Shown: one piece after another, positions 8,226 through 51,349 of the stretch | How positions within the stretch are numbered: position 1 is the stretch's first letter | Layout: every line of letters starts with the position of its first letter | Assembly: GCF_001194135.2 (NCBI RefSeq) | Contig: NC_068991.1 | Location: 4,153,724 to 4,214,034, forward strand | Direction: 5' to 3' | Source of the DNA: Octopus bimaculoides | Taxonomy: Eukaryota | Length of the DNA: 60,311 nt | Notes under the pieces: model-generated | What the model saw: only the letters and a program-made list of their open reading frames with translations | Databases searched by the model: none | What the model was told of the DNA's origin: nothing | Made by a program: the position numbers and the translations under genes

Positions 8226-9047
8226 ACTTATTTTTACCATGGCCTAATTTAATTAGCACATCCTTTCAGAATTAAAAGATGGGTAGGACATGTATTAATT
8301 AGCTTGATTGGTATAATTTAAAATAGAGTTTAGCTAGGCTGATATATGATAACTATTAATAACAGTGGTTGAGGAGATAATGACAATGATGGCAGTTGTA
8401 GTAGAAATGATGATATGCAAATGAGGAAAGTGGTGGGAGACAAAGCAAAAAACAGAAAGTAGAGAAAGACTTAAATTGGATATCGTTTACAAACATTTTC
8501 TTCTTTCTCATAATAAATAAACATTTAGTGATTTGCTATCAATAGTTTTGTGATTTCTACTCAGAAAATGTTGAGGAGTTCTTTAATGATAAATTGTATA
8601 AGTGAGACTTAGAATTTTTTTTTTTTTTTTTAATTGTAATAAACTTACTAATGACAACTTTCCTTTCTCTTTTGATCTTTAAAAGATCAATAAAATGTGG
8701 GTCAGAGCAAGATCTTTCAACACATTCTGCAATCTGACAGAAAGCCCATAGATGGATGGAGCCTATTGGTAAACAGTCTTACCAGATTTGTGTGCCAAAT
8801 ATGATTACATGCTTTGCTGATGTTAAGTAGGAACAACACTATTAGAAAATTACTATTTTTAAATCTCACAACGAGAGATATTCAGCAACAGTACTTTGGA
8901 ATAAAGATTGTTTGCCAACATAACATGGCAGTCCTGGTTTGGGACGAATGTTGCTGTAATTTAGCCCCAGATCACTGACTAGTTGTCACTTTGAAAACTA
9001 TATTTCAAACAGGAATTTGGCAGCGCCACCTCTAACCAAACAATTAT

Positions 9048-9092
9048 TATGTGCTGATGAAGAGAAATAACCCAGAAATCGCAATACACAGG
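9048..9092 (+). ncRNA. Type I hammerhead ribozyme motif, copy 1
   Basis: TATGTG-CTGATGA-AGAGAAATAACCCA-GAAA-TCGCAA-TA-CACAGG gives core CUGAUGA/GAAA, stem I TGTG/CACA extended by AAACAAT/ATTGTTT, and an AUA cleavage triplet. Confidence 0.65.
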
Positions 9093-9399
9093 TATTGTTT
9101 TGAGCTGAGTGGGGGTGCTAGATTCACTTGTTCGAAAATATAAGAACACAGATCGTGTCATATAGCCAGCTGGAGACAATGTCTCCTGGGGCTAAATTAC
9201 AGCAACATTCGTCCTCAGCTAGGACTGCCATGTTATATTGGCAAACAATCTTTACTCCAAAGTACTGTTGCTGAATATCTCTCATTGTGAGATCTAAAAA
9301 TAGTAATCTTCTAATTTATAGATCAGTGACTAGTTGTCACTTTGAAAACATATATTTTGAACAAGAATTTGGCAGCACCACCTCTAGCCAAACAATTAT

Positions 9400-9444
9400 T
9401 CTGTGCTGATGAAGGGAAATAATCCAGAAATCGTGATACACAGA
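9400..9444 (+). ncRNA. Type I hammerhead ribozyme motif, copy 2
   Basis: TCTGTG-CTGATGA-AGGGAAATAATCCA-GAAA-TCGTGA-TA-CACAGA gives a perfect 6-bp stem I (TCTGTG/CACAGA), a short stem II, and a near-palindromic stem III ATCGTGAT. Confidence 0.7.
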
Positions 9445-10303
9445 TATTCTTTGAGTTGAGTAGGGGTGCTAGATTCCCTTGTTTGAAAATATAAGAACAC
9501 AGATCATGTCGTATAGCCAGCTGGAGATGATGTCTCCTGGGGCTAAATCACAGCAACATTTGTCCTAAACCAGGACTGCCATGTTATATTGGCAAACAAT
9601 CTTTACTCGAAGAACACTATTTCCACCAAATTTCTTGAGGATAATGGCCCACAGGAGAGTAGGTCATCAGTAAATCTGAACTTACAAAGGTTGTTCTGGT
9701 GGTCATTAAGAAGGAAGAAGGGCTTGAGGAGAAAATCACTAATGAGTGTATCACTGTTAAGACTTAAGGTGCTCTTGTCCCCAAATATTGGAATAGGTCC
9801 CTATAAAGAGAAATACTGAAGAGCTTGAGGAGGACAAAGGCTAACTTTAAGGTGCATTGTCTGAGGTGAATGGATGGATAGTCAGAACTAATGACATTGG
9901 TGATTTAAAGCAACGGTCAACGACCTAGGTGCTAGCACTCGCCGATGAGCAATCAACTGGCCACAGTGAGGGGTTTGGCCCTTTGGAGGCAATGGATGGG
10001 CATTGAGCCTCAGAGCAGTTGATAAGCATTTGACTTGATACCCATAACTTTCAAATAATGGTAGAACTAGCCATGAGCACATCAAGACTAATTCACCATT
10101 TCACTAAAAATGATAATTATGAGTAAGTTGGCATAGAGCAGTAATGTCAGCCAAAGAAATCAATTGTGTTAGCAGTATGAAAAATAACAGGTTTACTGAT
10201 GAAGAGTGAAGCATTTTTACTTCTCTTCAATGTGCCCACTTGAACTAAAGTTGTAACAGAAACAACTATGATAAGAGAAATGAAAGACAAATATGTATTC
10301 TCG

Positions 10304-11973: not shown

Positions 11974-12795
<822 letters not shown>

Positions 12796-21232: not shown

Positions 21233-21840
21233 TGGCCATGTGGTTAAGAGGTTCAGGTTGTGGTTTCAGGTTCAGTCACACTGCATGGCACCTTGGGCAA
21301 GTGTTTTCTGCTTTAGCCCTGGACCTATCAATGCCTTGTGTGTGAGTGTATTTGAGAGCCAGAAACTGAAAGAAGTTCATCACATGTGTGTTTATGCACA
21401 TGTGTGGCCTTGTCTTGACATCATGTGGTAGTTGTAAATGAATGTCATTCATTTTCAACATTCTATGAAAATATATCCGGGGATGGGGAAATACTACCTT
21501 GTTTGGAAACTGGTGAGGGTTGGCAACAGGAAGGACATCCAGCCATAGAAAATCTGCTTCAATAAACTCCATTTGAGCCATGCTTTCATGGAAAAGTGGA
21601 TGTTAAAAAAGTTGTGTGTGTGTGTGTGTGTGTTTATGCTATGTTTGTCCACCACTAGAGCTTGACAACTGGTGTTGGCTTGTTTATGTCCCCATTGCTT
21701 AGCGGCTCAGCAAAAGAGACTGATGGAATATGAACCAAACTTAAAAAGGAAATAAGTGCTGGGGTCAATTTGTTCAACTAAACCCTTCAAAGCAGTGCCT
21801 CAGCATAGTTGCAGTCCAATGACTGAAACAAGTAAAAGAT
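21233..21840 (+). mobile_element. SINE family A composite copy
   Basis: Head GGCCATGTGGTTAAGAGGTTCAGGTT...GGCACCTTGGGCAAGTG, then body and 3' AATGACTGAAACAAGTAAAAGATAAAAGA. Boundaries are approximate. Confidence 0.7.
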
Positions 21841-24610: not shown

Positions 24611-25324
24611 GACAATAATAACATAAAAATGTTCCCCCACCCACCCTCACTGGCACAAGGCCACAAATTTGAATGGGAGAAGATTATACTAAAAATTAAC
24701 TGAATACTCTAAGATATAAATGATCAGAATTTTACAACCTTCAAAGAACAAAAATTGATTTCGATGGGATTTTATCCCAATACATAGACAAAACAAGATT
24801 AAACAAGGACATTTTAGTCCAACATTCTAATGATTTCACTGATCCCACCATCTTCAATGAGATGAGAATAACAATATACTCTGAGATCTTGCAATACTAC
24901 AGGTATACCACTGATTTTATGGCATCTTTAGTTCCAAAGCCTTGATGGATTAACTATTTTGCTAGTTAGGACCATCTGTGATCATGTAACACTTCATCAC
25001 CAATCTCTCACCTACTAATTATATACTTCCATGTGTCATAAATATCACACAGCTTATGTACTGAAATACTACAGTCCAATTTTTTTTCAACAGTTCTACT
25101 TTATCTTGAATCAATAAGGATTGGTGTTTATATTTGACTTTGACACTACTGGTTCTCTTACCTGCATTAGCCATAGTTAAGAGTAACTTAAAGCGAAATA
25201 AGCATAAGAGCACACAAAATTTTGGCATTGCCACAAACAAGTGCAGTATAAATTATGCAAGTAAAAATAGGCCACACACAATGCTACCTGTGGTCATGCA
25301 ATGAACTAGACTGAAGGTCACAGG

Positions 25325-25375
<51 letters not shown>

Positions 25376-27189
25376 CGCGCGCGCGTGTGTGTGTGTATGC
25401 GCGTGTCTGTCTGTCTGTCTTACTCCTTGTTTTGGCATTGTGTGATAATTGTAAATGAGTATCATTGTCATACAAGCAATGTCATTCATTTCCAATCTTC
25501 CATAAAAACATGTCTGGCTATGGGGAAATACTACTTTGCTTGTAAACAGGTCAGGGTTGGTGACACGAAGGGCGTCTCACTGTAGAAAAGCTGCTTTAAG
25601 AAACTTGCACTTTCTTCCGCTCATTCTTGTTCGTGACACAGTGAGATTCTTCATTTCAGCTTTAAAGTCACTTCCCTCGATACTACAATCCCTTATTTGA
25701 GGGGTCTTGTCTTACAAGCTACTTGGTAATTTCACTGGTGCCGATGCCACATAAAAAGCCCCTGGTACATTCTGTAAAATGGTTGGCATTAGGAAGAACA
25801 TCCAGCCATTGAAACCATGCCAAAACAGATGTTAGAGCTTGGCACAGTCTTCTAGCTCATCAGCTCCTACCAAACTGTCCAACTATGCCAGTATGGAAAA
25901 AAAAATAGCAAACATTAACTAATGATCATGATAATGATGAGCTTCCTGGAATGAAGAGATATACACTATCACATGCATACATACACATACTTAAAATAGA
26001 AGCACACTCATAACCTTATGTACACACACGTGTCAATGAAATAAACACTCTTACCCATATGTATGCAAACATACACCAACATATATTCAAGCATCAATTC
26101 ACATACATAGTCACAAATCCATCTAACAGTCATGACTTTGTTTTTACTTAATGACCAGCTTAAATTCTGAGATGCGTATTTTATTTAAATATATCTCAAA
26201 AATGCATACATTATGAATACATAAAGAAGTAGAAATATGACCAAATTGCATATAAACATACAAGTATGTATATACACACACATTAATATAAAGAGATGGG
26301 GAAAAGAGAGAAATGTGCATACAGACATATAAACATCTGCATATATATATATATATATATATATATACATTTCTATACACACACATATACATGTATGTAT
26401 ATACATGTGTGTATATATACATACATGAATATCGTTATATACATAAACATGCACACAAATATAAGCACATACATACATGTGCACACACACACACACACAT
26501 GTGCATACATCAATGATTATATACACAGCCATTAAAAAAAATGCATATATACATATACACACAAACACATATACATGGCTGTTAAAATATGTTATTCCAT
26601 TAATATATGCCACACAACATTTCACAACTCATCAGTAACTTATGTTATTTCATCTGTTAGGTACAGAATCCTGAAATCTAACCTCACCACATCTCATATC
26701 ACTTTTTTTTTTTTCTCACTTCTTCCAGTATGACTTCCTCCTATCAGTACCCACCACTTTTTCATAAAACATCCCCCACCCTTACATTCCTCAGCCAAAC
26801 CCCCATATTACCCAGTCACCCTTATTTCAATTATGCTCTTGTTTTTCATACAAGTTAATCTAACACACCCAATGCACCTTTACTCATTTTGCTTCAATCC
26901 CCATAGATTTTACATTCAATCTCTAGTCCTGATTGAATAAACTTATGATCAAGGAATGACCATCTTGTATGTAGAACTGAGTAGTGTATATATATACATG
27001 CATATACATAAACATACATACATACATATGTGTATATACACATCATGAGGATTTTAATATATCTATCCACACATGTACGTATATACACGCACATGAGCAT
27101 ATATATACATGTATACACTGATGATTATATATATCTACCTATCATATATATATATATATATATATATANNNNNNNNNNNNNNNNTATAT

Positions 27190-27545: not shown

Positions 27546-28167
27546 AGAAATATACATTCACACGCATACAAGTATGTCTAAGACTATATACACTTTCTTA
27601 TGTTAGAATGGTATTTGAAGGATATTTGGCTGCTATTTATAACAGACCCTATGACATTGTAGGAGCACACTCATAGCCCATGTTGTTGTTATTGTTTAAC
27701 CCCCAGTCAATCCTGATCATGTAGATTTAGAATAAAAGGCATTCAATCCATGACCATCCTGATTTTTTTTTCCAGCTAACCAGGCATGGTCTTGTGATCA
27801 AGACAGCTGTTTTGCAACTACATGGTTTCAGGTTTAATGCAACACCTTGGCAATGTCTTCTACTATACACCCTGGGGCCAAACAATGACATGTAAGTGAA
27901 TACTGTAGACAGAAACTGCATAAAACCTCTCATGAATGTATATGCATGCATTCATATCTACATGTATATGGCTCTCAACATCTGAGAACTTTTGGTTTAT
28001 TTACATCCTCATAACCTAGCAGTTTGGCAAAAATAAACTAATGTAATATGTAGCAGACTTTAAAAAAATAAGTACTGGAAGCTCGATTTGACTCAATCCG
28101 TCAAGGTGGCGCCCTAGCAGAGCAGGACTTCAATGGGTTAAATTAGTAAAAAGACTACAAGAATATA

Positions 28168-29401
28168 TCAGGTCATTAAGAATGAAATGTCCGATTTCTA
28201 ATACACCAAATTTGACAATTGTTAACTCTAATGTTTTATCCTGACAATTCTTTGTTTTACAATCACTTTTCGAAATGCAATTTCATGGTGTCTGATTTGT
28301 GAGTTTTCTCTTGTAAATCAATTTTTGTGAACCCATGGATAGATAAAAAATTGTGTTGTTTATGAATGAGACCTGTCATGGAACCAATGCATCTCAGACA
28401 ACTTGAAACATCAATGAAGTGTTTGGTGAAGATGTGGCGAATAAGCGCACTGTACATCAGTAGTTTGAGAATTTCCGGTCTGGTGACTTTACTTGTGAAA
28501 ATCAGTCCCACGGAAGACCTGAAATCAAGATGGATAATGATGTGCTGGAAACTGTAGTAAAAGCGGGTACATCTCAAACTATGCGTGAGTTAGCAGCAAG
28601 GCTTGAGGTTTCAATTCCAACTGTATTGGACCATCTGAAACAAATCGGCAAGGTAAAGAAGCTGGACAAGTGGGTATCACATGATCTGAACATGCATCAA
28701 ATGACATGTTGTCGTCAAACTTGCTGTTCTTTACTGTCATGGCATAAAAGCAAACCATTTTTGCATTGTATTGTTACACATGATGAAAAATGGATTCTTT
28801 TTAACAATAGCAAGTGTTCTGCATGGTAGTTGGATAGAGACAATCCAAAAAAGAATATTCACCAAAAAAAGCTAATGGTGTCTCTTTGGTGGTCCAGTGC
28901 TGATGCTATCTACTACAGCTTCAACCTGGTAAGTCAGTTACAGCAGATGTATACATCAATCAAGTAGATGAAATGATGAGTGAACTTGCAATTAAACAAC
29001 CGAGATTGGTCAATAGAGACAGGCCAATTTTCTTGCAAGTCAGTGCTCGACCACATGTTGCACAAAGAAAGCTACTCAAGTTATAGGAACTGAACTTCGA
29101 AGTACTCTGTCATTCATCATATTCACCAGACCTTGCACCAATTGACCATCATGCTTTCCAGACAACTTTTTGCAACAAAAAAACTTCAAATCTGAAGAAG
29201 ACACAAGAACAGCCTTTCGTGATTTCATCACCTCTTGCTCTCCAGAATTTTTTGCTGCTGGCGTAAATAAGCTACCAATAAAATGGCAAAACTGTGTTGA
29301 TAATTTAGGTGCATACTTTGGTTAACTGCATTGCTTTTTGTTGTGATAAAGTAAAATAAACTTTCAGTTCAAAATTGGACATTTCATTCTTAATGACCTG
29401 A
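28168..29401 (+). mobile_element. Near full-length defective mariner transposon
   Basis: Perfect 25-bp TIR TCAGGTCATTAAGAATGAAATGTCC / GGACATTTCATTCTTAATGACCTGA with TA on both sides. Motifs KKLDKWVSH, VTHDEKW and YSPDLAP are present, with stops and frameshifts. Confidence 0.95.
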
Positions 29402-30749: not shown

Positions 30750-31420
30750 GGTGTGGCTGTGAAGTTAGGAAGTCTCACCACATGGCACCTTGCATAAGTG
30801 TCTTCTACTACAGTCTTAGGCCAACTAAAGTCTTATAAGTGGATTTGCTAGACAGAAACTGAAAGCAGCCTATCGTGTATATGTATATCATCAACAACAT
30901 TTAACACCCGCTTTCAATTCTGGCATGGGTTGGATGGCTTGACAGCACTCAGCAAGCTGTAAGGCCACATCAAGCTCTGATGTCAGTTTTAGTATGGTTT
31001 CTATGGTTGGATGCCCTTCCTAATGCCAACCACTTTACAGAGTCTACTGGGTGCTTTTTGTGACACCAGTAAACAACTTGGAAGGCAAGGAAAGAACAGG
31101 AAGAAGGGAAAAGGGAGACAAGAAAAGAACAAAAAAGAAAAAGCCTCATTGACGAATGTGGTGGGGCAATATTTAAGTGCAATGATTCCAAACCAAGTGT
31201 AAGTGTATGTATGTGTTCTATCGATATCATGTGACTGTTGTAAATGAATGTCATTCATTTCCAATATTCTGCAAAAACATGTCTGGCTATAAGGAGAAGC
31301 ATTACTTTGCTTGGAAACAGGTAAGGATTGGTGATAGGTTGGAGATCCAGTCATTGGAAATCTGTCTCAATAAACTCCAGCCAACCCATGCAAGCATGGA
31401 AAAGTGGACATTATGATGAT
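30750..31420 (+). mobile_element. SINE family A with an embedded reverse family C-like segment
   Basis: The head and GACAGAAACTGAAAGCAG body are interrupted at about 30890 by CATCAACAACATTTAACACCCGC...GGATGCCCTTCCTAATGCCAACC. Confidence 0.6.
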
Positions 31421-34225: not shown

Positions 34226-34560
34226 ATCATCATCATCATTTAACGTCCACTTTCCATGCTAGCATGGGTTGGACGATTTGACTGAGGACTGGTGAAACCA
34301 GATGGCTACACCAGGCTCCAATCTGATTTGGCAGAGTTTCTACAGCTGGATGCCCTTCCTAACGCTAACCACTCCGAGAGTGTAGTGGGTGCTTTTACGT
34401 GCCACCGGCACAAAGGCCAGTCAGGCGGTATAGCAACGGCCACTCTCAAAACGGTGTATTTTACATGCCACCCGCACAAGAGCCAGTCCAGGGGCACTGG
34501 CAACGATCTCGCTCGAAAGTCCTTACACATGCCACGGGCACAAGTGCCAGAAAGGCAACG
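34226..34560 (-). mobile_element. Young retroposon family C copy
   Basis: Reverse complement of 10304-10529, longer at its 5' end. The (ATC)n tail is at 34226 and CpGs are retained. Confidence 0.85.
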
Positions 34561-35834
34561 CTAAAATATTTTGAGTATTGTAGAAGTACAACCAATTTAT
34601 TGTACATAAATTTTAATAAAATCTTATATGGACCCCCAAAGGTCATTTGGACCCCTAAGGGTTATATGGACTCCTAGTTATATGGACTCCAGTGCTCTAG
34701 GGCTTTAGTTATCTGAGCAAAATAGTGATATGACAGTTACATTCCTTCTGAACATTATGACTGATTACATTGTGCCTTCAAAAACCAGTGGAATTATAAT
34801 TACTTTGAAAACAGCTAAGTATTGACAACAGGAAGGGCATCTGGTCAAGTTTTTTCTGCTACTGCTTTGTGTGAATCAATGCCTTGCAAGTGAAATCAGC
34901 ATGGAAACATGTTGCAAGCGTGAGTGTGTATATGTGTCTGCATGAAAGTTGCTTCTTGCATGAGAATGTCAGAGCAAATAAATAATGTTGTCATGTTTAC
35001 GATCCTGGTGAAGGTTAAACCTCATAGCTCTCCACTCTTAAAGTAGCAGAATAAAAAATAAAAAACATCCCTAACAGGTAAGAATTGGCAATACAAGAAG
35101 CATCTGGCTGTTAAAATACTACTTCATACAAGCGCCTATATGCACCTACCTAACCTATACCAGCACAGAAATATACAAAACAAAGCAACTAAAATACACA
35201 CAGAGACACACACACACACATATATATATATATCAAATAACATGAAGTTGCTAGACAAAAATCAGTAAACATTTTTCATCTATATTATATTACATAAGGG
35301 ATATCCCAGCTGCTTACCAGTCAAAACAAGGTCAGTATTTTGTTTACAATACACATATCAATAAATATTGTTTATATAATTACATATAATGAAATCGTTA
35401 CTATTCATCTAAATATATATCTTTATTGCAGTGTTACCAAATACTAAGATTATACATACATACACACACACAAACAAACAGACAATTATTCTTATCCATT
35501 TGATAGGTCATTTTCTTTCTGCTATTGATTTTAATTTTAGAAAAGAAGGAATCAATTTTCAATCTAGGCCTTAGCATGAATGATTCAAATCTATACAATG
35601 TATTGTATGTTATTTCTTTCTCCATCCTCATCATTTCTAGACCTGTTTCAATATGGGTACAATCTCAGTAATAAAGTATATTTATAATATTAGTGAATTT
35701 AAGTCACGGTTACACTGTTCAAAGTTATGTGTAAACCATGATCAGACAGGTAAAAATGAATGAAACAGAGCAGAGAAATAAGCTTGGTCATCATTCAGTG
35801 AAGTTTTTTTTTTTTCCTCCAAAGAAAAACACAT

Positions 35835-43129: not shown

Positions 43130-43540
43130 CAGAATAAGTGTTTTGAAATTTGGGCACAAAGTCGCCAATTTCGGAGAAGGGGTTAAGTTGACTACATCAA
43201 CACCAGTATTCAACTGGTACTTATTTTATCGACCTTAAAAGACAAAAGACAAAGAATCGAGGTCGGCGGAATTTGAACTCAGAACGTAAAGACGGACGAA
43301 ATGCCACTAAGAAATGCCCGACATGGTAACGATTCGGTAAATTTTCAGATTAACATCCGGACGATCTTCACTAGGGTGTTAGGGTTAAGGTTTTAGGGTT
43401 ACGGTTACGGATGGAATTCCCTTACCCAAACCCTAAAACCCTAACCCTGACCCTAAAACCCTAACTGTAACACCCTAGTGAAAATCGTGCAGGTGTTAAT
43501 CTGAAAATTTACCAACGATTCTGCCAGTTTGTCGCCTTAA
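43130..43540 (-). mobile_element. SINE family B copy interrupted by a MITE
   Basis: The family B body resumes AACGATTCTGCCAGTTTGTCGCC after the insertion. Confidence 0.8.
43336..43513. mobile_element. 178-bp foldback MITE with 8-bp TSD, GGTAA termini (Merlin-like) and telomere-like internal repeats
   Basis: TSD AACGATTC at 43328-43335 and 43514-43521. ~46-bp TIR GGTAAATTTTCAGATTAACA...CACTAGGGTGTTA. The left arm is TTAGGG-like and the right arm is CCCTAA-like. Confidence 0.85.
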
Positions 43541-44822: not shown

Positions 44823-45409
44823 CATGAATACATATATATAAATACATATACATATAAACATATCATCATCATCATCATCATTTTAATGTCCGTTGTCCAT
44901 GTCAGCATGGCTTGAATGGTTTGACTGGGCTGGCACACTGGAAGACTGCACCAGACCCCAGTCTGATTTGGCATGGTTTTCTACAGCTGGATGCCCTTCC
45001 TAACACCAACCACTTCAAGAGTGTAATGGGTGCTTTTATGTACCACTGGCACAGGTGCCATTTGTGGTGTCCATACACATATTTGAGTGTGCATATATGT
45101 ATGTATCACTACCATCATCATTTTACACCTGTTTTCCAAGCTGATGAGGATTGGATGAGTTATCAAGATTAGGGACAGCACACATTTGGGGGAGTTGCTT
45201 ACCTGGGAGACATCATCTCAAACGTTTAGCTTGGTTTCTGTGGCAGAATGTCTTTCCAACTACTATACATAATGCATTGGGAATATTTTTCTAGACACTA
45301 GTACCAGAGAGGTAGCTATGTCCTCAAATAAAGGAACATCGCAAGCCCATAACTCTGCTCGCTCACCAGCCTCTTCACAGAATAAGAAGCATGTGGGATA
45401 GGGGTATAA

Positions 45410-46639: not shown

Positions 46640-49230
46640 TATTGTGCTTCCAGAACCTCAGTTTTGCTGTGATGGGTGTGTTTTCTCAATCACGTACATC
46701 ACCAGTCACACTTCCTTTATCATCTTCATGAGGTTCAAAGTCTTCTTGATCAGCTTTAACTACTTCGTCCCATGTGTTCCTGGGTGTCTCTCTTCCAGAA
46801 GCTCCATCCACATTAAGTCACTGGCACTTCTTTATACATGTCTTCATCCATACAAGTTATATCAGGTCATTTAGAAGGAAATGTCTGATATTCTTATGCA
46901 CCAAGTTTGACAGTCAATTAACTCCAATGTTTTATCCTGACAATTCTTTGTTTTACGACGTTGAAGATTTACATCATCACTTTTTGAAATGCAATTCATG
47001 GTGTCTGATTATATTGTGCTTTCTCCTGTAAATCAATTTTTGTGAACCCATGGATAGATAAAAAAATTTATGTTGTTTATGAATACAAGTTCCATCATGG
47101 AACCAATACCTCCCAGGCAGCTCGAAACATCAATGAGGTGTTTGGTGAAGATGTGGCGAATGAGCGCACTGTACTTCAAGGGTTTGAGAAGTTCCAGTCA
47201 GGTGACTTTACTCGTGAAAATCAGCCCTAAAACCAAGGTGGATAATGATGAGCTGGAAATCGTAGTGGAAGCGGATATATCTTAAACTACGTGTGAGTTA
47301 GCAGCAAGGTTTGAGGTTTCAATTCCAACTGTATTGGACCATCTGAAACAAATCAGGGTACCACATGAACTGAATGAGCATCAAATGACACATCATCTTG
47401 AAACTTGTTGTTCTTTACTGTCACGACATAAAAGCAAACCAGTTTTGCATTGTATTGTTACGCATGATGAAAAATGGATTCTTTTCAACAATAGCAAGCA
47501 TTCTGCATGGTAGTTGGATAGAGACGAAGTGCCAAAACACAATCCAACGAAGAATATTCACCAAAAAAAAAGCTAATGGTGTCTCTTTGGTGGTCCAGCA
47601 CTGGTGTCATCCACTAAAGCTTCATGAGACATGGTAAGTCAATTATATGTATACATCAACCAAGTGGATGAAATGATGAGTGAACTTGCAATTAAACAAC
47701 CGAGATTGGTCAACAGGGACAGGCCAATTTTCTTGCAAGACAATGCTCAACCACATGTTGCACAAAGAAAGCTACTCAAGTTACAGGAACTGAACTTTGA
47801 AGTACTCTGTTATCCACTATATTCACCAGATCTTGCACCAAATGACAATCAGGTTTTCCCGGTATTAGACAACTTTTTGCAAGGAAAAAAACCTCAAATC
47901 TGAAGATGCAAAAACAGCTTTCGTGATTTCATCACCTCTTGCTCTCCAGAATTTTTTGCTGCCAGCATAAATAAGCTACCGATAAAATGGCAAAATTTGA
48001 TTAACTGCATTGCTTTTTGTTGATATAAAGTAAAATAAACTTTCAGTTCAAAATCAGTCATTTCATTCTTAATGACCTGATATCAGTGCAGTCTTCTCTC
48101 ATGCACACTACAGGATTCTTCTTACACCCAATATTTTTCAACATGTTTGTACTTGTCATTCATATCCCTTTACATTGCACATTCAATGGAGCTTCATATC
48201 TTTCTAGAATTCACATGCCCTTGACATTCAAGGTTCACGTCTCTACCATGTAGCATTGCTGTTCATAAACAAGCATCAAATAATCTGTCTTTCACTGGGA
48301 GAGAAGTCTTGTTAGCCACAGAGGTAAAAGCTGTGCTTTCCCCAGCCTGTTCTTATTCTAATAACTATACTTCCAGAACATCCTCCTCCACTGCTAATTA
48401 GCTCACCTAGATAACAGAAACCACTGCCTCTATTTCCTATGCACTTTTAGAGTTTATTGCTCTTGCACATCTACCACATGTCTACTTTCTCTGTTAACCT
48501 ATCTGTGATATCACTGCAACTCTGTGTGTCCAGTTTGCATTGTGTACACCATATGGAATTTCTACCAACTCCTTTTCTACATATCAAACAAAGCCATTTC
48601 TCTGATGGAGGCAGAGTTCTATCTGTTTTCCTACTCGCTAAAACTTCAGTTTTTGCAAAGTTAACTTTGAAGTCCTTTGATTTCACAAACTTTGAATTTC
48701 TTTTATAATTATACTACAGAGTCAGCTGTAAGAACAAGGTCATCAACATAAGGGAGTTCCCATGGGTAACCAGTCTTATGACCTGGAAGACTATAATGGC
48801 TAGAAAGGGACTGAGAACTGAGCCCTGATGAACTCCTCCTACACACTGAATTCAGAGTTATACCCATTAACTCTCACCATACTGACAGCACCTCTGTACA
48901 TACTTTGTATGGTTTACACAAGCCATTCATCTACTTCTAGCTTCCTCAGTGACCATCAAAACATAGAAGGGGCCCTGATAAAGGCTTTCTTCTAGCCGAC
49001 GAATGCTGAGTGCAGCAGTTTCATTCTAGCTTAATACTTTTACTGCAGTTATGTCACAAAGAAGATGGCACTTGTAGCATTTTTCTCAAGCACAAAAATC
49101 ACACTACATCACATTTAGTCTAATTCCGTTCTTAATCAACTGAGCTATAACTCTTTCCATAACTTTCATGACCTAGTCCAGTAATTTGATTGCAATTTCC
49201 TCCATCTCCTTTACCCTTGTGAAAGATGAG
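46640..49230 (-). pseudogene. RTE-type LINE reverse transcriptase/3' region, decayed and split by a mariner (segments ~46640-46859 and ~48083-49230)
   Basis: Reverse translation gives KGKGD...IKLLD*VMKVMERVIAQLI and KVNFAKTEVL...WLCLICRKGVGRNSIWCTQCK. Both mariner flanks align collinearly with the plus-strand copy at about 51130-51349. Confidence 0.85.
46862..48080 (+). mobile_element. Near full-length defective mariner, same family as 28168-29401
   Basis: TA|TCAGGTCATT... and ...ATTTCATTCTTAATGACCTGA|TA. Motifs HDEKW, FLQDNAQPH and YSPDLAPND are present. Confidence 0.95.
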
Positions 49231-50316: not shown

Positions 50317-51349
50317 AGGGGTCCACCAAGGTCCAGTCCTCAGCCCCCTCCTATTTATCATAGTCCTCCAGGCAATAACACAGGAATTCAAGACAGGATG
50401 ACCCTGGGAGCTCCTCTATGCTGATGACATTGCCTTAATTGCTTAGTCACTATCAGAACTAGAGAAGTTTCAGGTGTGGAAGCAAGGACTAGAACCGAAG
50501 GGCTTTAGAGTCAACCTAGCTAAAACCAAAGTCCTAATAAGTAGGATGGTAGACAAAACACAAACCCCTTCAGGTAGATGGCCTTGCTCGATCTGTAGAA
50601 AAGGCGTAGGTAGAAACTCCATAAGATGTATCCAGTGTAAGCTATGGNNNNNNNNNNNNNNNNNNNNNNNNNNNNNNNNNNNNNNNNNNNNNNNNNNNNN
50701 NNNNNNNNNNNNNNNNNNNNNNNNNNNNNNNNNNNNNNNNNNNNNNNNNNNNNNNNNNNNNNNNNNNNNNNNNNNNNNNNNNNNNNNNNNNNNNNNNNNN
50801 NNNNNNNNNNNNNNNNNNNNNNNNNNNNNNNNNNNNNNNNNNNNNNNNNNNNNNNNNNNNNNNNNNNNNNNNNNNNNNNNNNNNNNNNNNNNNNNNNNNN
50901 NNNNNNNNNNNNGCAAAGTTCAGAGAACTCTTACCTCTACTGGTGACAAAGGGCCTCTCACTCAGAGTAAAAGGCAGACTGTATGACGCATGTGTACGAA
51001 CAGCCATGCTACATGGCAGTGAAACATGGGCCGTGACTGCTGAGGACATGCATAAGCTCGCAAGAAACGAAGCCAGTATGCTCCGATGGATGTGTCATGT
51101 CAGTGTGCATACTTGACAGAGTGTAAGTATCCTGAGAGAAAAGTTTGACCTAAGAAGCATCAGTTGTGGCGTGCAAGAGAGACGACTGCACTGGTATGGA
51201 CATGTGGCAAGAATGGATGAGGATAGCTGTGTGAAAAAGTGCCACACCCTAGCAGTTGAGTGAACCTGTGGAAGAGGTAGACCCAGGAAGACCTGGGATG
51301 GGGTGGTGAAGCACGACCTTAGAACTTTAAGCCTCACCAAGGCAATGAC
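50317..51349 (+). pseudogene. 5'-truncated RTE-type LINE reverse transcriptase
   Basis: GVHQGPVLSPLLFIIVLQAITQEFKTG*PWELLYADDIAL contains the YADD motif. Downstream are KGFRVNLAKTKV, CSICRKGVGRNSIRC, ACVRTAMLHGSETWAV and GRGRPRKTW. Confidence 0.95.

What the first reader, a model, noticed from the sequence alone, without database searches (positions are those of the whole stretch)
8969..9612. Tandem ~351-bp unit with two type-I hammerhead ribozyme motifs: candidate cephalopod retrozyme / circular-RNA replicon
Seen in sequence: CTGATGA at 9054 and 9406 (period 352), each followed by a short GGG-AAATAA-CCC-type stem II, GAAA, a minimal stem III and an AUA triplet, and closed by stem I (TCTGTG/CACAGA in copy 2, with a bulged AAACAAT/ATTGTTT extension in copy 1). 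Stem III reads ATCGCAAT and ATCGTGAT, each one CpG-decay step from the perfect palindrome ATCGCGAT. Established knowledge: minimal type-I hammerheads with palindromic stem III work as dimers, and they occur in Penelope-like pseudo-LTRs and in non-autonomous metazoan retrozymes that give monomer-length linear and circular RNAs. Inference: read-through transcription would excise a ~350-nt non-coding monomer that could circularise and be mobilised by a Penelope RT. I do not know whether this family is described. An extra A flanks each side of stem II, so activity is not assured.
Basis: partly seen in the sequence, partly recalled or inferred. Interest (0 to 1): 0.85.

Follow-up and report, generated by a model that had tools for sequence, protein, structure and literature searches.

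The report
Decayed hammerhead retrozyme insertion
This is most likely an old, mutated insertion of a small non-coding mobile element (a "retrozyme") that carries a self-cutting hammerhead RNA motif in each repeat; the kind is already known in animals, and the way this copy is inserted points to Penelope-like retrotransposon enzymes.

Summary
Two hammerhead core motifs (CTGATGA…GAAA…TA) lie 352 nt apart at 9054-9086 and 9406-9438, inside 1.83 direct repeats (8969-9611, about 90% identical).

The motif has the usual metazoan type I layout: helix I of 6 bp, helix II of 3 bp plus an A·A, and helix III of 2 bp with a 4-nt loop that was once palindromic. A motif like this is expected by chance about 0.005 times per window.

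- An inverted, 5'-truncated partial unit (8841-8970) abuts the array.
- A 9-bp target-site duplication (AACACTATT) flanks the whole 0.77-kb composite.
- The hammerhead caps a 42-50-bp hairpin, and the 352-nt monomer folds far better than shuffles (z = -6).

Tandem plus inverted truncated copy plus offset 3' ends is the insertion signature of Penelope-like elements.

Against the reading: no Rfam hammerhead model matches, and neither copy has an intact helix II. The units have decayed neutrally, largely at CpG sites. I could retrieve no other family member, so covariation is untested. Cephalopod origin is unverified.

Verdict: a probable non-LTR retrozyme relic, a new member of a known kind, probably inactive at this locus.

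The parts
8835..8843 (.). Left copy of the putative target-site duplication AACACTATT. Its last 3 nt overlap the end of the repeat homology (microhomology).
   Evidence: it is the only shared 9-mer between the two boundary zones, and it lies exactly where homology ends. The chance that two random 45-nt genomic zones share a 9-mer is about 0.01.
8841..8970 (-). Inverted, 5'-truncated partial unit. It is the reverse complement of 9186-9315 and lacks the hammerhead. Its 3' end faces outward (left) and its truncated 5' end abuts the direct array.
   Evidence: (I1: 130 nt, 93% complementary; I2: 92% to 9537-9611).
8969..9320 (+). Direct unit 1 (352 bp).
9320..9611 (+). Direct unit 2, truncated at unit position 292. 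This is the 3' end of the direct array.
   Evidence: 90.1% identical to unit 1 over 293 nt.
9613..9621 (.). Right copy of the putative target-site duplication AACACTATT.
9048..9092 (+). Hammerhead motif, copy 1. Helix I 5' strand 9048-9053; CUGAUGA 9054-9060; A-GAG-AAAUAA-CCC-A 9061-9074; GAA 9075-9077; helix III AUCGCAAU 9078-9085; A17 9086; helix I 3' strand 9087-9092. Damaged: A.C mismatch in helix II and A.G mismatch in helix I.
   Evidence: It fails the descriptor.
9400..9444 (+). Hammerhead motif, copy 2. Helix I UCUGUG/CACAGA (6 bp); CUGAUGA 9406-9412; A-GGG-AAAUAA-UCC-A; GAA; helix III AUCGUGAU 9430-9437; A17 9438; C1.1 9439.
   Evidence: Helix I and a 3-bp helix II variant (G-C, G-C, A-U, shifted one register from the GGG/UCC reading) appear in the unconstrained MFE fold.
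8999..9142 (+). Long imperfect hairpin of copy 1 (arms 8999-9053 and 9087-9142, 42 pairs). Its tip is the hammerhead core with helices II and III, so it is an extended helix I.
9341..9503 (+). The same long hairpin in copy 2 (arms 9341-9405 and 9439-9503, 50 pairs).
   Evidence: (z = -3.5).
9087..9438 (+). Predicted 352-nt monomer between the two cleavage sites. 38% G+C, no ORF longer than 74 codons. Circular MFE is -103.9 kcal/mol.
   Evidence: (z = -6.0 against 200 shuffles; 1.3% of random 352-nt windows fold as well).

Best explanation
The 0.77-kb block at about 8844-9611 is one old insertion of a non-autonomous, non-coding retroelement of the metazoan non-LTR retrozyme kind. Its unit is 352 bp and carries one type I hammerhead ribozyme.

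Inferred life cycle of the family, from published retrozyme work and not shown here:
- A multimeric transcript folds so that each hammerhead caps a long helix I.
- Because helix III is only 2 bp with a palindromic tetraloop, hammerheads of neighbouring units pair through an 8-bp AUCGCGAU duplex and cut after A17.
[quoted passage not shown] A host RNA ligase can circularise them.
- The reverse transcriptase and GIY-YIG endonuclease of an autonomous Penelope-like element copy the RNA into nicked DNA.

What this locus shows is the outcome of such an event:
- Both DNA strands were used as primers, giving two cDNAs with their 3' ends outward. One is 1.83 direct units; the other is an inverted, 5'-truncated 130-nt piece.
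- The two 3' ends sit about 55 nt apart on the unit.
- The whole block is flanked by a 9-bp target-site duplication.

Since insertion the three pieces have drifted about 9-10% apart, largely by CpG decay. Helix II and, in copy 1, helix I are damaged, so this locus is probably a relic rather than a working source of circular RNA.
For: Shown by tools:
- All conserved core positions are present in both copies, in type I order.
- It is the only descriptor hit in 60 kb on both strands. The chance expectation is 0.005-0.08 per window.
- The palindromic helix III and the 7-bp helix I extension were not part of the descriptor, so they add to the case.
- The hammerhead sits at the tip of a 42-50-bp hairpin.
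- The monomer's circular fold has z = -6.0 and 65% of bases paired.
- The unit is 352 bp and 38% G+C. It has no long ORF, and its spurious ORFs have no protein homologue.
- Tandem units plus an inverted 5'-truncated copy.
- A 9-bp direct repeat lies exactly at the homology ends.
- The three pieces are about equally distant from each other (91, 91 and 90%). 23 of 28 differences are transitions and 11 of 28 lie at former CpG sites. This fits one insertion followed by neutral decay.

From papers:
- Canonical metazoan type I hammerheads have helix I of 6 bp, helix II of 4 bp, and helix III of 1-2 bp with a 2-4-nt palindromic loop. They act as dimers in tandem repeats. [quoted passage not shown]
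- Non-LTR retrozymes are 170-400 nt, low in G+C and highly self-paired, with target-site duplications longer than 4 bp. Axolotl HHR_Amex2 has a U.U mismatch at the base of helix II and still cleaves, better as a dimer (PMC7229834).
- PLE insertions are partial tandems with an adjacent inverted 5'-truncated copy and an optional 30-40-bp tail (PMC8557442).
- A PLE protein nicks and extends both strands and starts reverse transcription at two nearby sites (PMC11167929).
- Retrozymes are phylogenetically related to PLE pseudo-LTRs (bioRxiv 10.64898/2026.07.22.740005).
Against: - No Rfam hammerhead family matches. This holds at gathering score, at E <= 10 on 1.5 kb, and on 81-nt and 76-nt slices.
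- The G10.1-C11.1 pair, called highly conserved in PMC4209133, is replaced by A.A. Read the other way, there is an uncommon extra A between 11.1 and G12.
- Neither copy has three clean helix II pairs.
- Nearest-neighbour energies do not favour the isolated hammerhead fold: +2.4 kcal/mol for copy 1 and -2.6 for copy 2, against MFEs of -2.2 and -10.6.
- The two hammerheads descend from one insertion, so they count as a single observation.
- There is no other family copy in the window or in any searchable collection. Copy number, consensus and covariation are therefore unknown.
- No reverse transcriptase or GIY-YIG remnant was found in the ten window ORFs I scanned.
- The offset between the two 3' ends is about 55 nt, longer than the published 30-40-bp tail.
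- The target-site duplication is only 9 bp, with a background probability of about 1% per pair of zones.
Confidence: 0.7

Rival explanations
1. It is a fragment of an autonomous Penelope-like element, namely rearranged pseudo-LTR or UTR sequence. On this reading it is not a separate short non-autonomous retrozyme family, and the hammerhead is that element's pLTR ribozyme.
For: - PLE pseudo-LTRs carry type I hammerheads, and PLE insertions show tandem plus inverted truncated copies (PMC4209133, PMC8557442).
- Retrozyme consensus sequences are homologous to PLE termini (bioRxiv 10.64898/2026.07.22.740005).
- The extra nucleotide after A9 is a PLE hammerhead trait (PMC4209133).
Against: - The repeat period is 352 bp with no ORF between the two hammerheads, so the copied template itself had a short period.
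- Helix III of 2 bp plus a tetraloop, helix I of 6 bp and helix II of 4 positions is the 'canonical' retrozyme-type layout. It is not the min-HHR typical of metazoan PLEs, which have helix II of 6-8 bp and no helix III (PMC4209133).
- No RT or endonuclease remnant was found in the ten window ORFs scanned.
Confidence: 0.12
2. The hammerhead-like motif is a chance match inside an unrelated repeat. Candidates are a foldback or MITE-like element with 130-bp inverted arms, or a local duplication and inversion. No ribozyme was ever involved.
For: - No Rfam hammerhead hit.
- A.A at positions 10.1/11.1.
- Only one independent occurrence.
- The B'-A-B layout at 8841-9315 looks like long terminal inverted repeats.
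- The loosest descriptor is expected 0.08 times per window, so a scan of many windows would turn up some chance motifs.
Against: - The observed-like motif is expected only 0.005 times per window.
- It also has features that were not in the descriptor. These are a formerly perfect 8-nt palindrome at helix III, a 7-bp helix I extension, placement exactly at the tip of a 42-50-bp hairpin, and a unit size, G+C content and self-pairing typical of retrozymes.
- The 9-bp duplication flanks the whole composite 8844-9611, not the B'-A-B part. That does not fit a MITE.
Confidence: 0.1
3. The locus is still functional. Read-through transcripts are cut at both hammerheads and yield a 352-nt linear and circular RNA today.
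For: - Both copies keep every core nucleotide.
- Copy 2 keeps a 6-bp helix I and a 3-bp helix II.
- The two helix III sequences can still pair with each other in 7 of 8 positions (sequence).
- Axolotl HHR_Amex2 works with a mismatch at the base of helix II (PMC7229834).
Against: - Copy 1 has mismatches in helices I and II, and its hammerhead fold is unfavourable at +2.4 kcal/mol.
- The roughly 10% divergence has a neutral, CpG-decay pattern and shows no sparing of the helices.
- No promoter or expression evidence is available.
Confidence: 0.08

Closest known systems
Metazoan non-LTR retrozymes (coral Acropora millepora, mussel Mytilus galloprovincialis, axolotl; Cervera & de la Pena 2020, PMC7229834)
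   Same: - Short ORF-less tandem units (170-400 nt; here 352).
- Low G+C (here 38%).
- One type I hammerhead per unit.
- A highly self-paired monomer RNA.
- A target-site duplication longer than 4 bp.
- A weak helix III that implies action as a dimer. In axolotl HHR_Amex2 there is also a mismatch at the base of helix II.
   Different: - Only 1.83 units are present, with an inverted partial unit attached.
- The base of helix II is A.A.
- No evidence here of copy number, expression or circles.
- There is no detectable sequence similarity that I could test.
Schistosoma Sm-alpha and newt satellite 2 repeats (classical ~330-bp repeats with canonical type I hammerheads)
   Same: - Unit size.
- Type I topology.
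- Helix I of about 6 bp followed by an internal loop.
- A helix III that is short, as published for the newt and other amphibian repeats (PMC7229834); for Schistosoma the short helix III is from memory.
- From memory and not tested: an A-rich loop 2 (AAAUAA here) and a UAY bulge on the 5' strand of helix I resemble the Schistosoma tertiary-contact motifs.
   Different: Members of that group are, from memory, covered by Rfam Hammerhead_1 (RF00163); I did not run one as a positive control here. This sequence is not matched by any Rfam hammerhead model. It also lacks the G10.1-C11.1 pair.
Penelope-like elements and their pseudo-LTR hammerheads (PMC4209133, PMC8557442, PMC11167929)
   Same: - Insertion architecture: a partial tandem, an adjacent inverted 5'-truncated copy, offset 3' ends ('tail') and a variable target-site duplication.
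- An extra nucleotide between A9 and helix II.
- A palindromic 15.2-16.2 pair and loop 3.
   Different: - No RT or GIY-YIG ORF.
- The unit is 352 bp rather than about 3 kb.
- Helix II is short (3-4 positions) and helix III is present, unlike most metazoan min-HHRs.
- The offset is about 55 nt rather than 30-40 bp.
Plant LTR retrozymes and hammerhead viroid-like circular RNAs
   Same: A self-cleaving hammerhead delimits a non-coding, highly structured RNA that can circularise.
   Different: Those carry type III hammerheads, LTRs with PBS/PPT, 4-bp target-site duplications, G+C above 55% and units of 600-1000 nt (PMC7229834, PMC7761336).

Membership tests
Hammerhead ribozyme, type I | Conserved core: C3 U4 G5 A6 N7 G8 A9, G12 A13 A14, A15.1-U16.1, and H17 that is not G. 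| tested here: met
   Both copies carry CUGAUGA, GAA, A15.1...U16.1 and A17.
Hammerhead ribozyme, type I | Three helices around the core, with helices II and III closed by loops and helix I open. | tested here: met
   Copy 2 has helix I of 6 bp, helix II of 3 bp and helix III of 2 bp with a 4-nt loop. Copy 1 has one mismatch each in helices I and II.
Hammerhead ribozyme, type I | G10.1-C11.1 pair at the base of helix II, with no insertion between 11.1 and G12. | tested here: not met
   The sequence reads A-GGG...CCC-A. This is either A.A at 10.1/11.1 or one extra A on each side. Two precedents exist: U.U in axolotl HHR_Amex2 (PMC7229834), and an extra nucleotide after A9 in PLE hammerheads (PMC4209133).
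Hammerhead ribozyme, type I | Match to an Rfam hammerhead covariance model (RF00163 and relatives). | tested here: not met
   No hit at gathering score or at E <= 10 on 1.5 kb, 81 nt and 76 nt.
Hammerhead ribozyme, type I | Compensatory changes in helices I-III across family members. | not testable with these tools
   Only two copies exist and both come from one insertion. No other copy was found in the window or in the collections.
Hammerhead ribozyme, type I | Self-cleavage 3' of H17. | not testable with these tools
   This needs in vitro transcription of monomer and dimer constructs.
Metazoan non-LTR retrozyme | Type I hammerhead in each unit of a short tandem repeat (about 150-450 bp, from dimers upward). 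| tested here: met
   There are 1.83 units of 352 bp, each with the motif.
Metazoan non-LTR retrozyme | No protein-coding capacity, no LTR/PBS/PPT, and G+C below 45-50%. | tested here: met
   The longest stop-to-stop frame is 74 codons. Its translations have no homologue. G+C is 38%.
Metazoan non-LTR retrozyme | Monomer RNA predicted to be stable and highly self-paired. | tested here: met
   Circular MFE is -103.9 kcal/mol against -73.5 +/- 5.1 for shuffles, z = -6.0, with 65% of bases paired.
Metazoan non-LTR retrozyme | Target-site duplication longer than 4 bp, when present. | tested here: met
   AACACTATT occurs at 8835-8843 and 9613-9621.
Metazoan non-LTR retrozyme | Multi-copy dispersed family in the genome, co-occurring with autonomous PLEs. 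| not testable with these tools
   The source genome is not searchable. There is one locus in 60 kb and no RT or GIY-YIG in the scanned ORFs.
Metazoan non-LTR retrozyme | Expression as linear and circular monomer RNAs. | not testable with these tools
   This needs RNA data.
Penelope-like-element type insertion | A partial tandem with an inverted 5'-truncated copy adjacent to its upstream end (PMC8557442). | tested here: met
   The inverted unit part 8841-8970 abuts the direct array that starts at 8969.
Penelope-like-element type insertion | An optional 30-40-bp 'tail', meaning two alternative 3' ends or RT start sites (PMC8557442, PMC11167929). | tested here: inconclusive
   The two outward 3' ends map to unit positions 292 and about 344-347. 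The offset is 53-56 nt, longer than published. This is a single locus only.
Penelope-like-element type insertion | An ORF encoding RT and GIY-YIG endonuclease. | tested here: not met
   There is none in the element. If PLE-mobilised, it is therefore non-autonomous.

The most novel reading that the evidence does not exclude
The unit represents an undescribed and possibly still active retrozyme family of a cephalopod or other mollusc. Two things would make it new:
- Its hammerhead departs from the consensus, with A.A in place of G10.1-C11.1, and is an obligate dimer that Rfam models miss.
- Its insertion, with twin-strand priming, offset RT start sites and a target-site duplication, gives direct structural evidence that Penelope-like RT/endonuclease mobilises retrozyme RNA. 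Until now that link has been inferred from co-occurrence and sequence relatedness.
Probability: 0.25. Interest if true: 0.5.

Novelty: new member of a known kind. Interest (0 to 1): 0.3.

Why it matters
Retrozymes are the main source of hammerhead ribozymes and of ribozyme-derived circular RNAs in animals. The enzyme that mobilises them is still inferred rather than shown.

A retrozyme insertion with the full Penelope-type footprint would be a small but concrete piece of evidence for that link. The footprint here is a tandem, an inverted 5'-truncated copy, offset 3' ends and a target-site duplication.

The case also shows that Rfam-based annotation can miss retrozyme hammerheads that have a mismatch at the base of helix II. 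Counts such as the 235 hammerhead_1 hits in the giant squid genome (PMC6962438) may therefore be underestimates.

As a single decayed copy, the locus itself is ordinary genomic debris.

Tried and rejected
- Rfam cmscan, on the whole window at gathering score and on three sub-regions at E <= 10. No hammerhead was reported. The only hits were C/D-box snoRNA, miRNA, lncRNA and CRISPR-repeat noise at 8-19 bits. The snoRNA hits come from the UGAUGA and CUGA strings, and I rejected them.
- Fishing for family copies through spurious ORFs. I searched a 384-aa concatenate of seven frames of the unit against the 5.8-billion protein set and got no hit.
- Exact-pattern scans. Two scans of metagenome contigs, one of prokaryotic genomes and one of viral contigs all gave zero.
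- Other copies in the window: none. No other hammerhead-like site among the 42 CTGANGA sites.
- Organism identification:
  - The window's mariner ORF is not on record.
  - Its best protein relatives are only 63% identical.
  - The contigs that carry them are named only by accession: ERZ25067582, and SRR11869384 and related runs.
  - Those contigs are 71-77% identical in DNA and do not contain the unit.
  - 'Cephalopod' therefore stays unverified.
- Nearest-neighbour folding of the isolated 49-nt domains and of domain dimers. It does not recover the active fold. This is expected for hammerheads and was not used as evidence either way.
- MITE or foldback reading of the 130-bp inverted arms. Rejected because the flanking duplication encloses the whole composite.
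- Assembly artefact. Rejected because the three pieces differ by 9-10% and the region has no N.
- One literature search on cephalopod hammerheads was uninformative.
- I did not build a full-length consensus or ancestral unit. Ancestral states were inferred only for a few ribozyme positions.
Full report
**1. Observation**

- CTGATGA is at 9054-9060 and 9406-9412.
- GAAA is at 9075-9078 and 9427-9430.
- U16.1-A17 is at 9085-9086 and 9437-9438, followed by CACAG.
- The predicted cleavage sites are therefore 9086|9087 and 9438|9439, and the monomer between them is 352 nt.

The two motifs lie in direct repeats, 8969-9320 and 9320-9611. These are 90.1% identical over 293 nt, E = 5e-111. TRF does not list the repeat, because there are only 1.83 units.

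The parts, copy by copy:

| Part | Copy 1 | Copy 2 |
|---|---|---|
| Helix I | UAUGUG/CACAGG (A.G mismatch at 2.5/1.5, G.U at 2.6/1.6) | UCUGUG/CACAGA (6 bp) |
| Helix II | A-GAG-AAAUAA-CCC-A | A-GGG-AAAUAA-UCC-A |
| Helix III | AUCGCAAU | AUCGUGAU |

So the GGG/CCC helix II of the finding exists only as an inferred ancestor. The extra A on each side of helix II is real.

**2. Is it more than chance?**

I wrote a loose type I descriptor with these requirements:
- CUGANGA;
- helix II of at least 2-3 bp, with an optional flanking mismatch;
- GAAA;
- A15.1...U16.1-H17, with helix III either minimal or at least 3 bp;
- helix I of at least 4-6 bp.

It hits only 9406-9438 in the whole window on both strands. 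Copy 1 fails because of its A.C mismatch in helix II.

In 1500 dinucleotide-preserving shuffles, the expected number per window is 0.005 for observed-like stringency, 0.011 for intermediate and 0.08 for the loosest.

Three features outside the descriptor strengthen the case.
- Helix III in the two copies is CA versus TG at one dinucleotide. This is one of three such sites in the unit, so both copies probably decayed from CG, giving a perfect 8-nt palindrome AUCGCGAU.
- Copy 1 keeps a 7-bp continuation of helix I (AAACAAU/AUUGUUU) after a small internal loop.
- The core with helices II and III sits exactly at the tip of a long imperfect hairpin. Copy 1 has 42 enclosing pairs (8999-9053 with 9087-9142) and copy 2 has 50 (9341-9405 with 9439-9503).

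In copy 2, helix I and a 3-bp helix II variant (G-C, G-C, A-U, one register off the GGG/UCC reading) appear in the unconstrained MFE structure.

**3.

- An inverted partial unit, 8841-8970, is the reverse complement of 9186-9315 (93%) and of 9537-9611 (92%). It abuts the 5' end of the direct array. It lacks the hammerhead and is 5'-truncated, with its 3' end facing outward.
- The 9-mer AACACTATT occurs at 8835-8843 and 9613-9621, exactly where homology to the unit stops on each side. Two random 45-nt zones of this window share a 9-mer with probability about 0.01. I read it as a target-site duplication that encloses the whole composite, so the inverted piece and the 1.83 direct units arrived in one event.
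- The three pieces are about equally diverged from each other: 91, 91 and 90% in the 78 shared columns. 23 of 28 differences between units are transitions, and 11 of 28 lie at present or former CpG sites. The window as a whole has a CpG observed/expected ratio of 0.46. This is neutral decay after a single insertion. It also rules out an assembly duplication.
- The two outward 3' ends map to different unit positions, 292 for the direct array and about 344-347 for the inverted piece. The offset is 53-56 nt.

**4. The RNA**

The 352-nt monomer (9087-9438) is 38% G+C.

As a circle it folds at -103.9 kcal/mol, against -73.5 +/- 5.1 for 200 shuffles. That gives z = -6.0, with 65% of bases paired. 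Only 1.3% of random 352-nt pieces of the window fold as well.

It has no reading frame longer than 74 codons. A concatenate of its seven longest frames has no homologue in the 5.8-billion protein set. The minus strand carries no hammerhead.

**5. Comparison with what is known**

Cervera and de la Pena describe the canonical metazoan type I hammerhead (PMC4209133).
- Helix I is 6 bp and helix II is 4 bp.
- Helix III is 1-2 bp, capped by a 2-4-nt palindromic loop, too weak for a monomer but active as a dimer in tandem repeats.
- They also report a conserved extra nucleotide between A9 and 10.1 in PLE hammerheads, and palindromic 15.2-16.2 and loop 3.

The motif here fits this layout: 6 bp; 4 positions, of which 3 pair; and 2 bp plus a CGCG loop.

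Their 2020 paper defines metazoan non-LTR retrozymes (PMC7229834).
- They are ORF-less tandem units of about 170-400 nt with one type I hammerhead each.
- They have low G+C, target-site duplications longer than 4 bp, and highly self-paired circular RNAs.
- The axolotl HHR_Amex2 has a 2-bp helix III and a U.U mismatch at the base of helix II. It still cleaves, and much better as a dimer.

That is a direct precedent for the A.A here.

Craig et al. describe PLE insertions as partial tandems with an inverted 5'-truncated copy adjacent to the upstream end and an optional 30-40-bp tail at one end (PMC8557442). The 2024 in vitro study of an Anolis PLE shows that the protein nicks and extends both DNA strands. 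It also starts reverse transcription at two nearby internal sites, and the interval between those sites is the tail (PMC11167929).

The layout at 8844-9611 is what such a reaction would leave if the template were a multimeric or circular 352-nt RNA.

A 2026 preprint links retrozymes to PLE pseudo-LTRs by co-occurrence and phylogeny. It does not use insertion architecture (bioRxiv 10.64898/2026.07.22.740005).

**6. Evidence against, and limits**

- No Rfam hammerhead model reports a hit. This holds at gathering score on the window, at E <= 10 on 1.5 kb and on 81-nt and 76-nt slices. At that size, hits of 8-9 bits are listed, so the hammerhead models score below that or are filtered out.
- G10.1-C11.1, called highly conserved in PMC4209133, is absent.
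- Isolated-domain energies do not favour the hammerhead fold. Such models ignore the core's tertiary contacts, so I give this little weight.
- The two motifs are one independent observation.
- I could not obtain any other family member. There is none in the window, in metagenome contigs, or in prokaryotic genomes and viral contigs. Consensus, copy number and covariation remain untested.
- No RT or GIY-YIG remnant turned up in the ten window ORFs scanned.
- The resemblance of loop 2 (AAAUAA) and the UAU internal loop to the Schistosoma tertiary-contact motifs is from memory only and was not tested.

**7. Organism**

The window looks like a draft animal genome. It is 34% G+C and CpG-depleted, with N gaps, many microsatellites, two mariner copies and a possible retrotransposon (RT-like) ORF fragment that Pfam did not confirm.

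I could not confirm 'cephalopod'.
- The mariner ORF is not on record.
- Its nearest relatives are 63% identical in protein and 71-77% in DNA.
- The contigs that carry them are named only by accession.

For context, the giant squid genome paper reports 235 Rfam hammerhead_1 hits (PMC6962438). My literature searches found no description of cephalopod retrozymes.

**8. Verdict**

The best reading (confidence about 0.7) is a relic insertion of a non-LTR retrozyme made by Penelope-type machinery. It is a new member of a known kind.

The rivals are:
- a rearranged PLE terminus rather than a separate short family (0.12);
- a chance motif in an unrelated repeat (0.10);
- a locus that is still active (0.08).

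Interest is modest. The kind is well described in animals, including a mollusc, and this copy is decayed. Two points are worth carrying forward: the PLE-type footprint on a retrozyme insertion, and the fact that Rfam models miss this hammerhead variant.

Noticed in passing
window 8841-9315: The inverted partial unit and unit 1 form a 130-bp, 93% complementary inverted repeat separated by 215 nt. A read-through transcript would fold into a long dsRNA hairpin with the hammerhead region in its loop. That could be a substrate for RNA editing or small-RNA pathways.
   Followed up: partly
window 8969 / 8841-8845 (unit positions): The 5' end of the direct array is monomer position 234, counted from the cleavage site. 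It lies only 5-8 nt after the position where the inverted piece ends (226-229). All three pieces could therefore derive from one RNA of almost exactly two unit lengths with ends near 233/234, or from fixed family termini. The chance of such adjacency is roughly 5%. Unexplained.
   Followed up: partly
window 28166-29400 and 46860-48080: Two copies of a mariner-type DNA transposon. An N-terminal transposase remnant lies at 28464-28826; its relatives carry Pfam HTH_48. The copies are 71-77% identical in DNA to contigs from ENA ERZ25067582 and from Logan SRR11869384 and related runs.
   Followed up: partly
window 10465(-), 34282(+), 46461(-): A dispersed repeat family shares 'TGGACGATTTGACTGAGGACTGGTGAAACC...GATTTGGCAGAGTTTCT' at three sites. 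A possibly related 'LQLDALPN(T/A)NH' frame lies at 34286-34561 and 44858-45169; the 34286-34561 copy overlaps the 34282 site, but I did not align the two families. Probably a SINE-like element. It contributes to the excess of CTGANGA sites: 42 observed against 26.6 expected.
   Followed up: no
window 21279-21602, 25256-25576, 31004-31366 (all -): Another repeat family, seen as similar frames: '...FPHPRIYFHRMLKMNDIHLQLPHD...', '...RILEMNDIHLQQSHDI...' and '...GRLEMNDIACMT...'. Not identified.
   Followed up: no
window 50474-50647 (+), next to an N gap: An ORF fragment, 'GFRVNLAKTKVL...CSICRKGVGRNSIRCIQCKLW', looks from memory like the C-terminal end of a non-LTR retrotransposon reverse transcriptase followed by a Cys-rich finger. 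Pfam gave no hit on the 58-aa piece.
   Followed up: partly
window 11977-12791; 43375-43465: An 815-bp (GAGA)n microsatellite, and a short interstitial stretch of telomere-like repeats: GGTTTTAGGGTTAA at 43375-43406 and, 13 nt further on, the opposite-strand form CCCTAACCCAAACCCTAAAA at 43419-43465.
   Followed up: no
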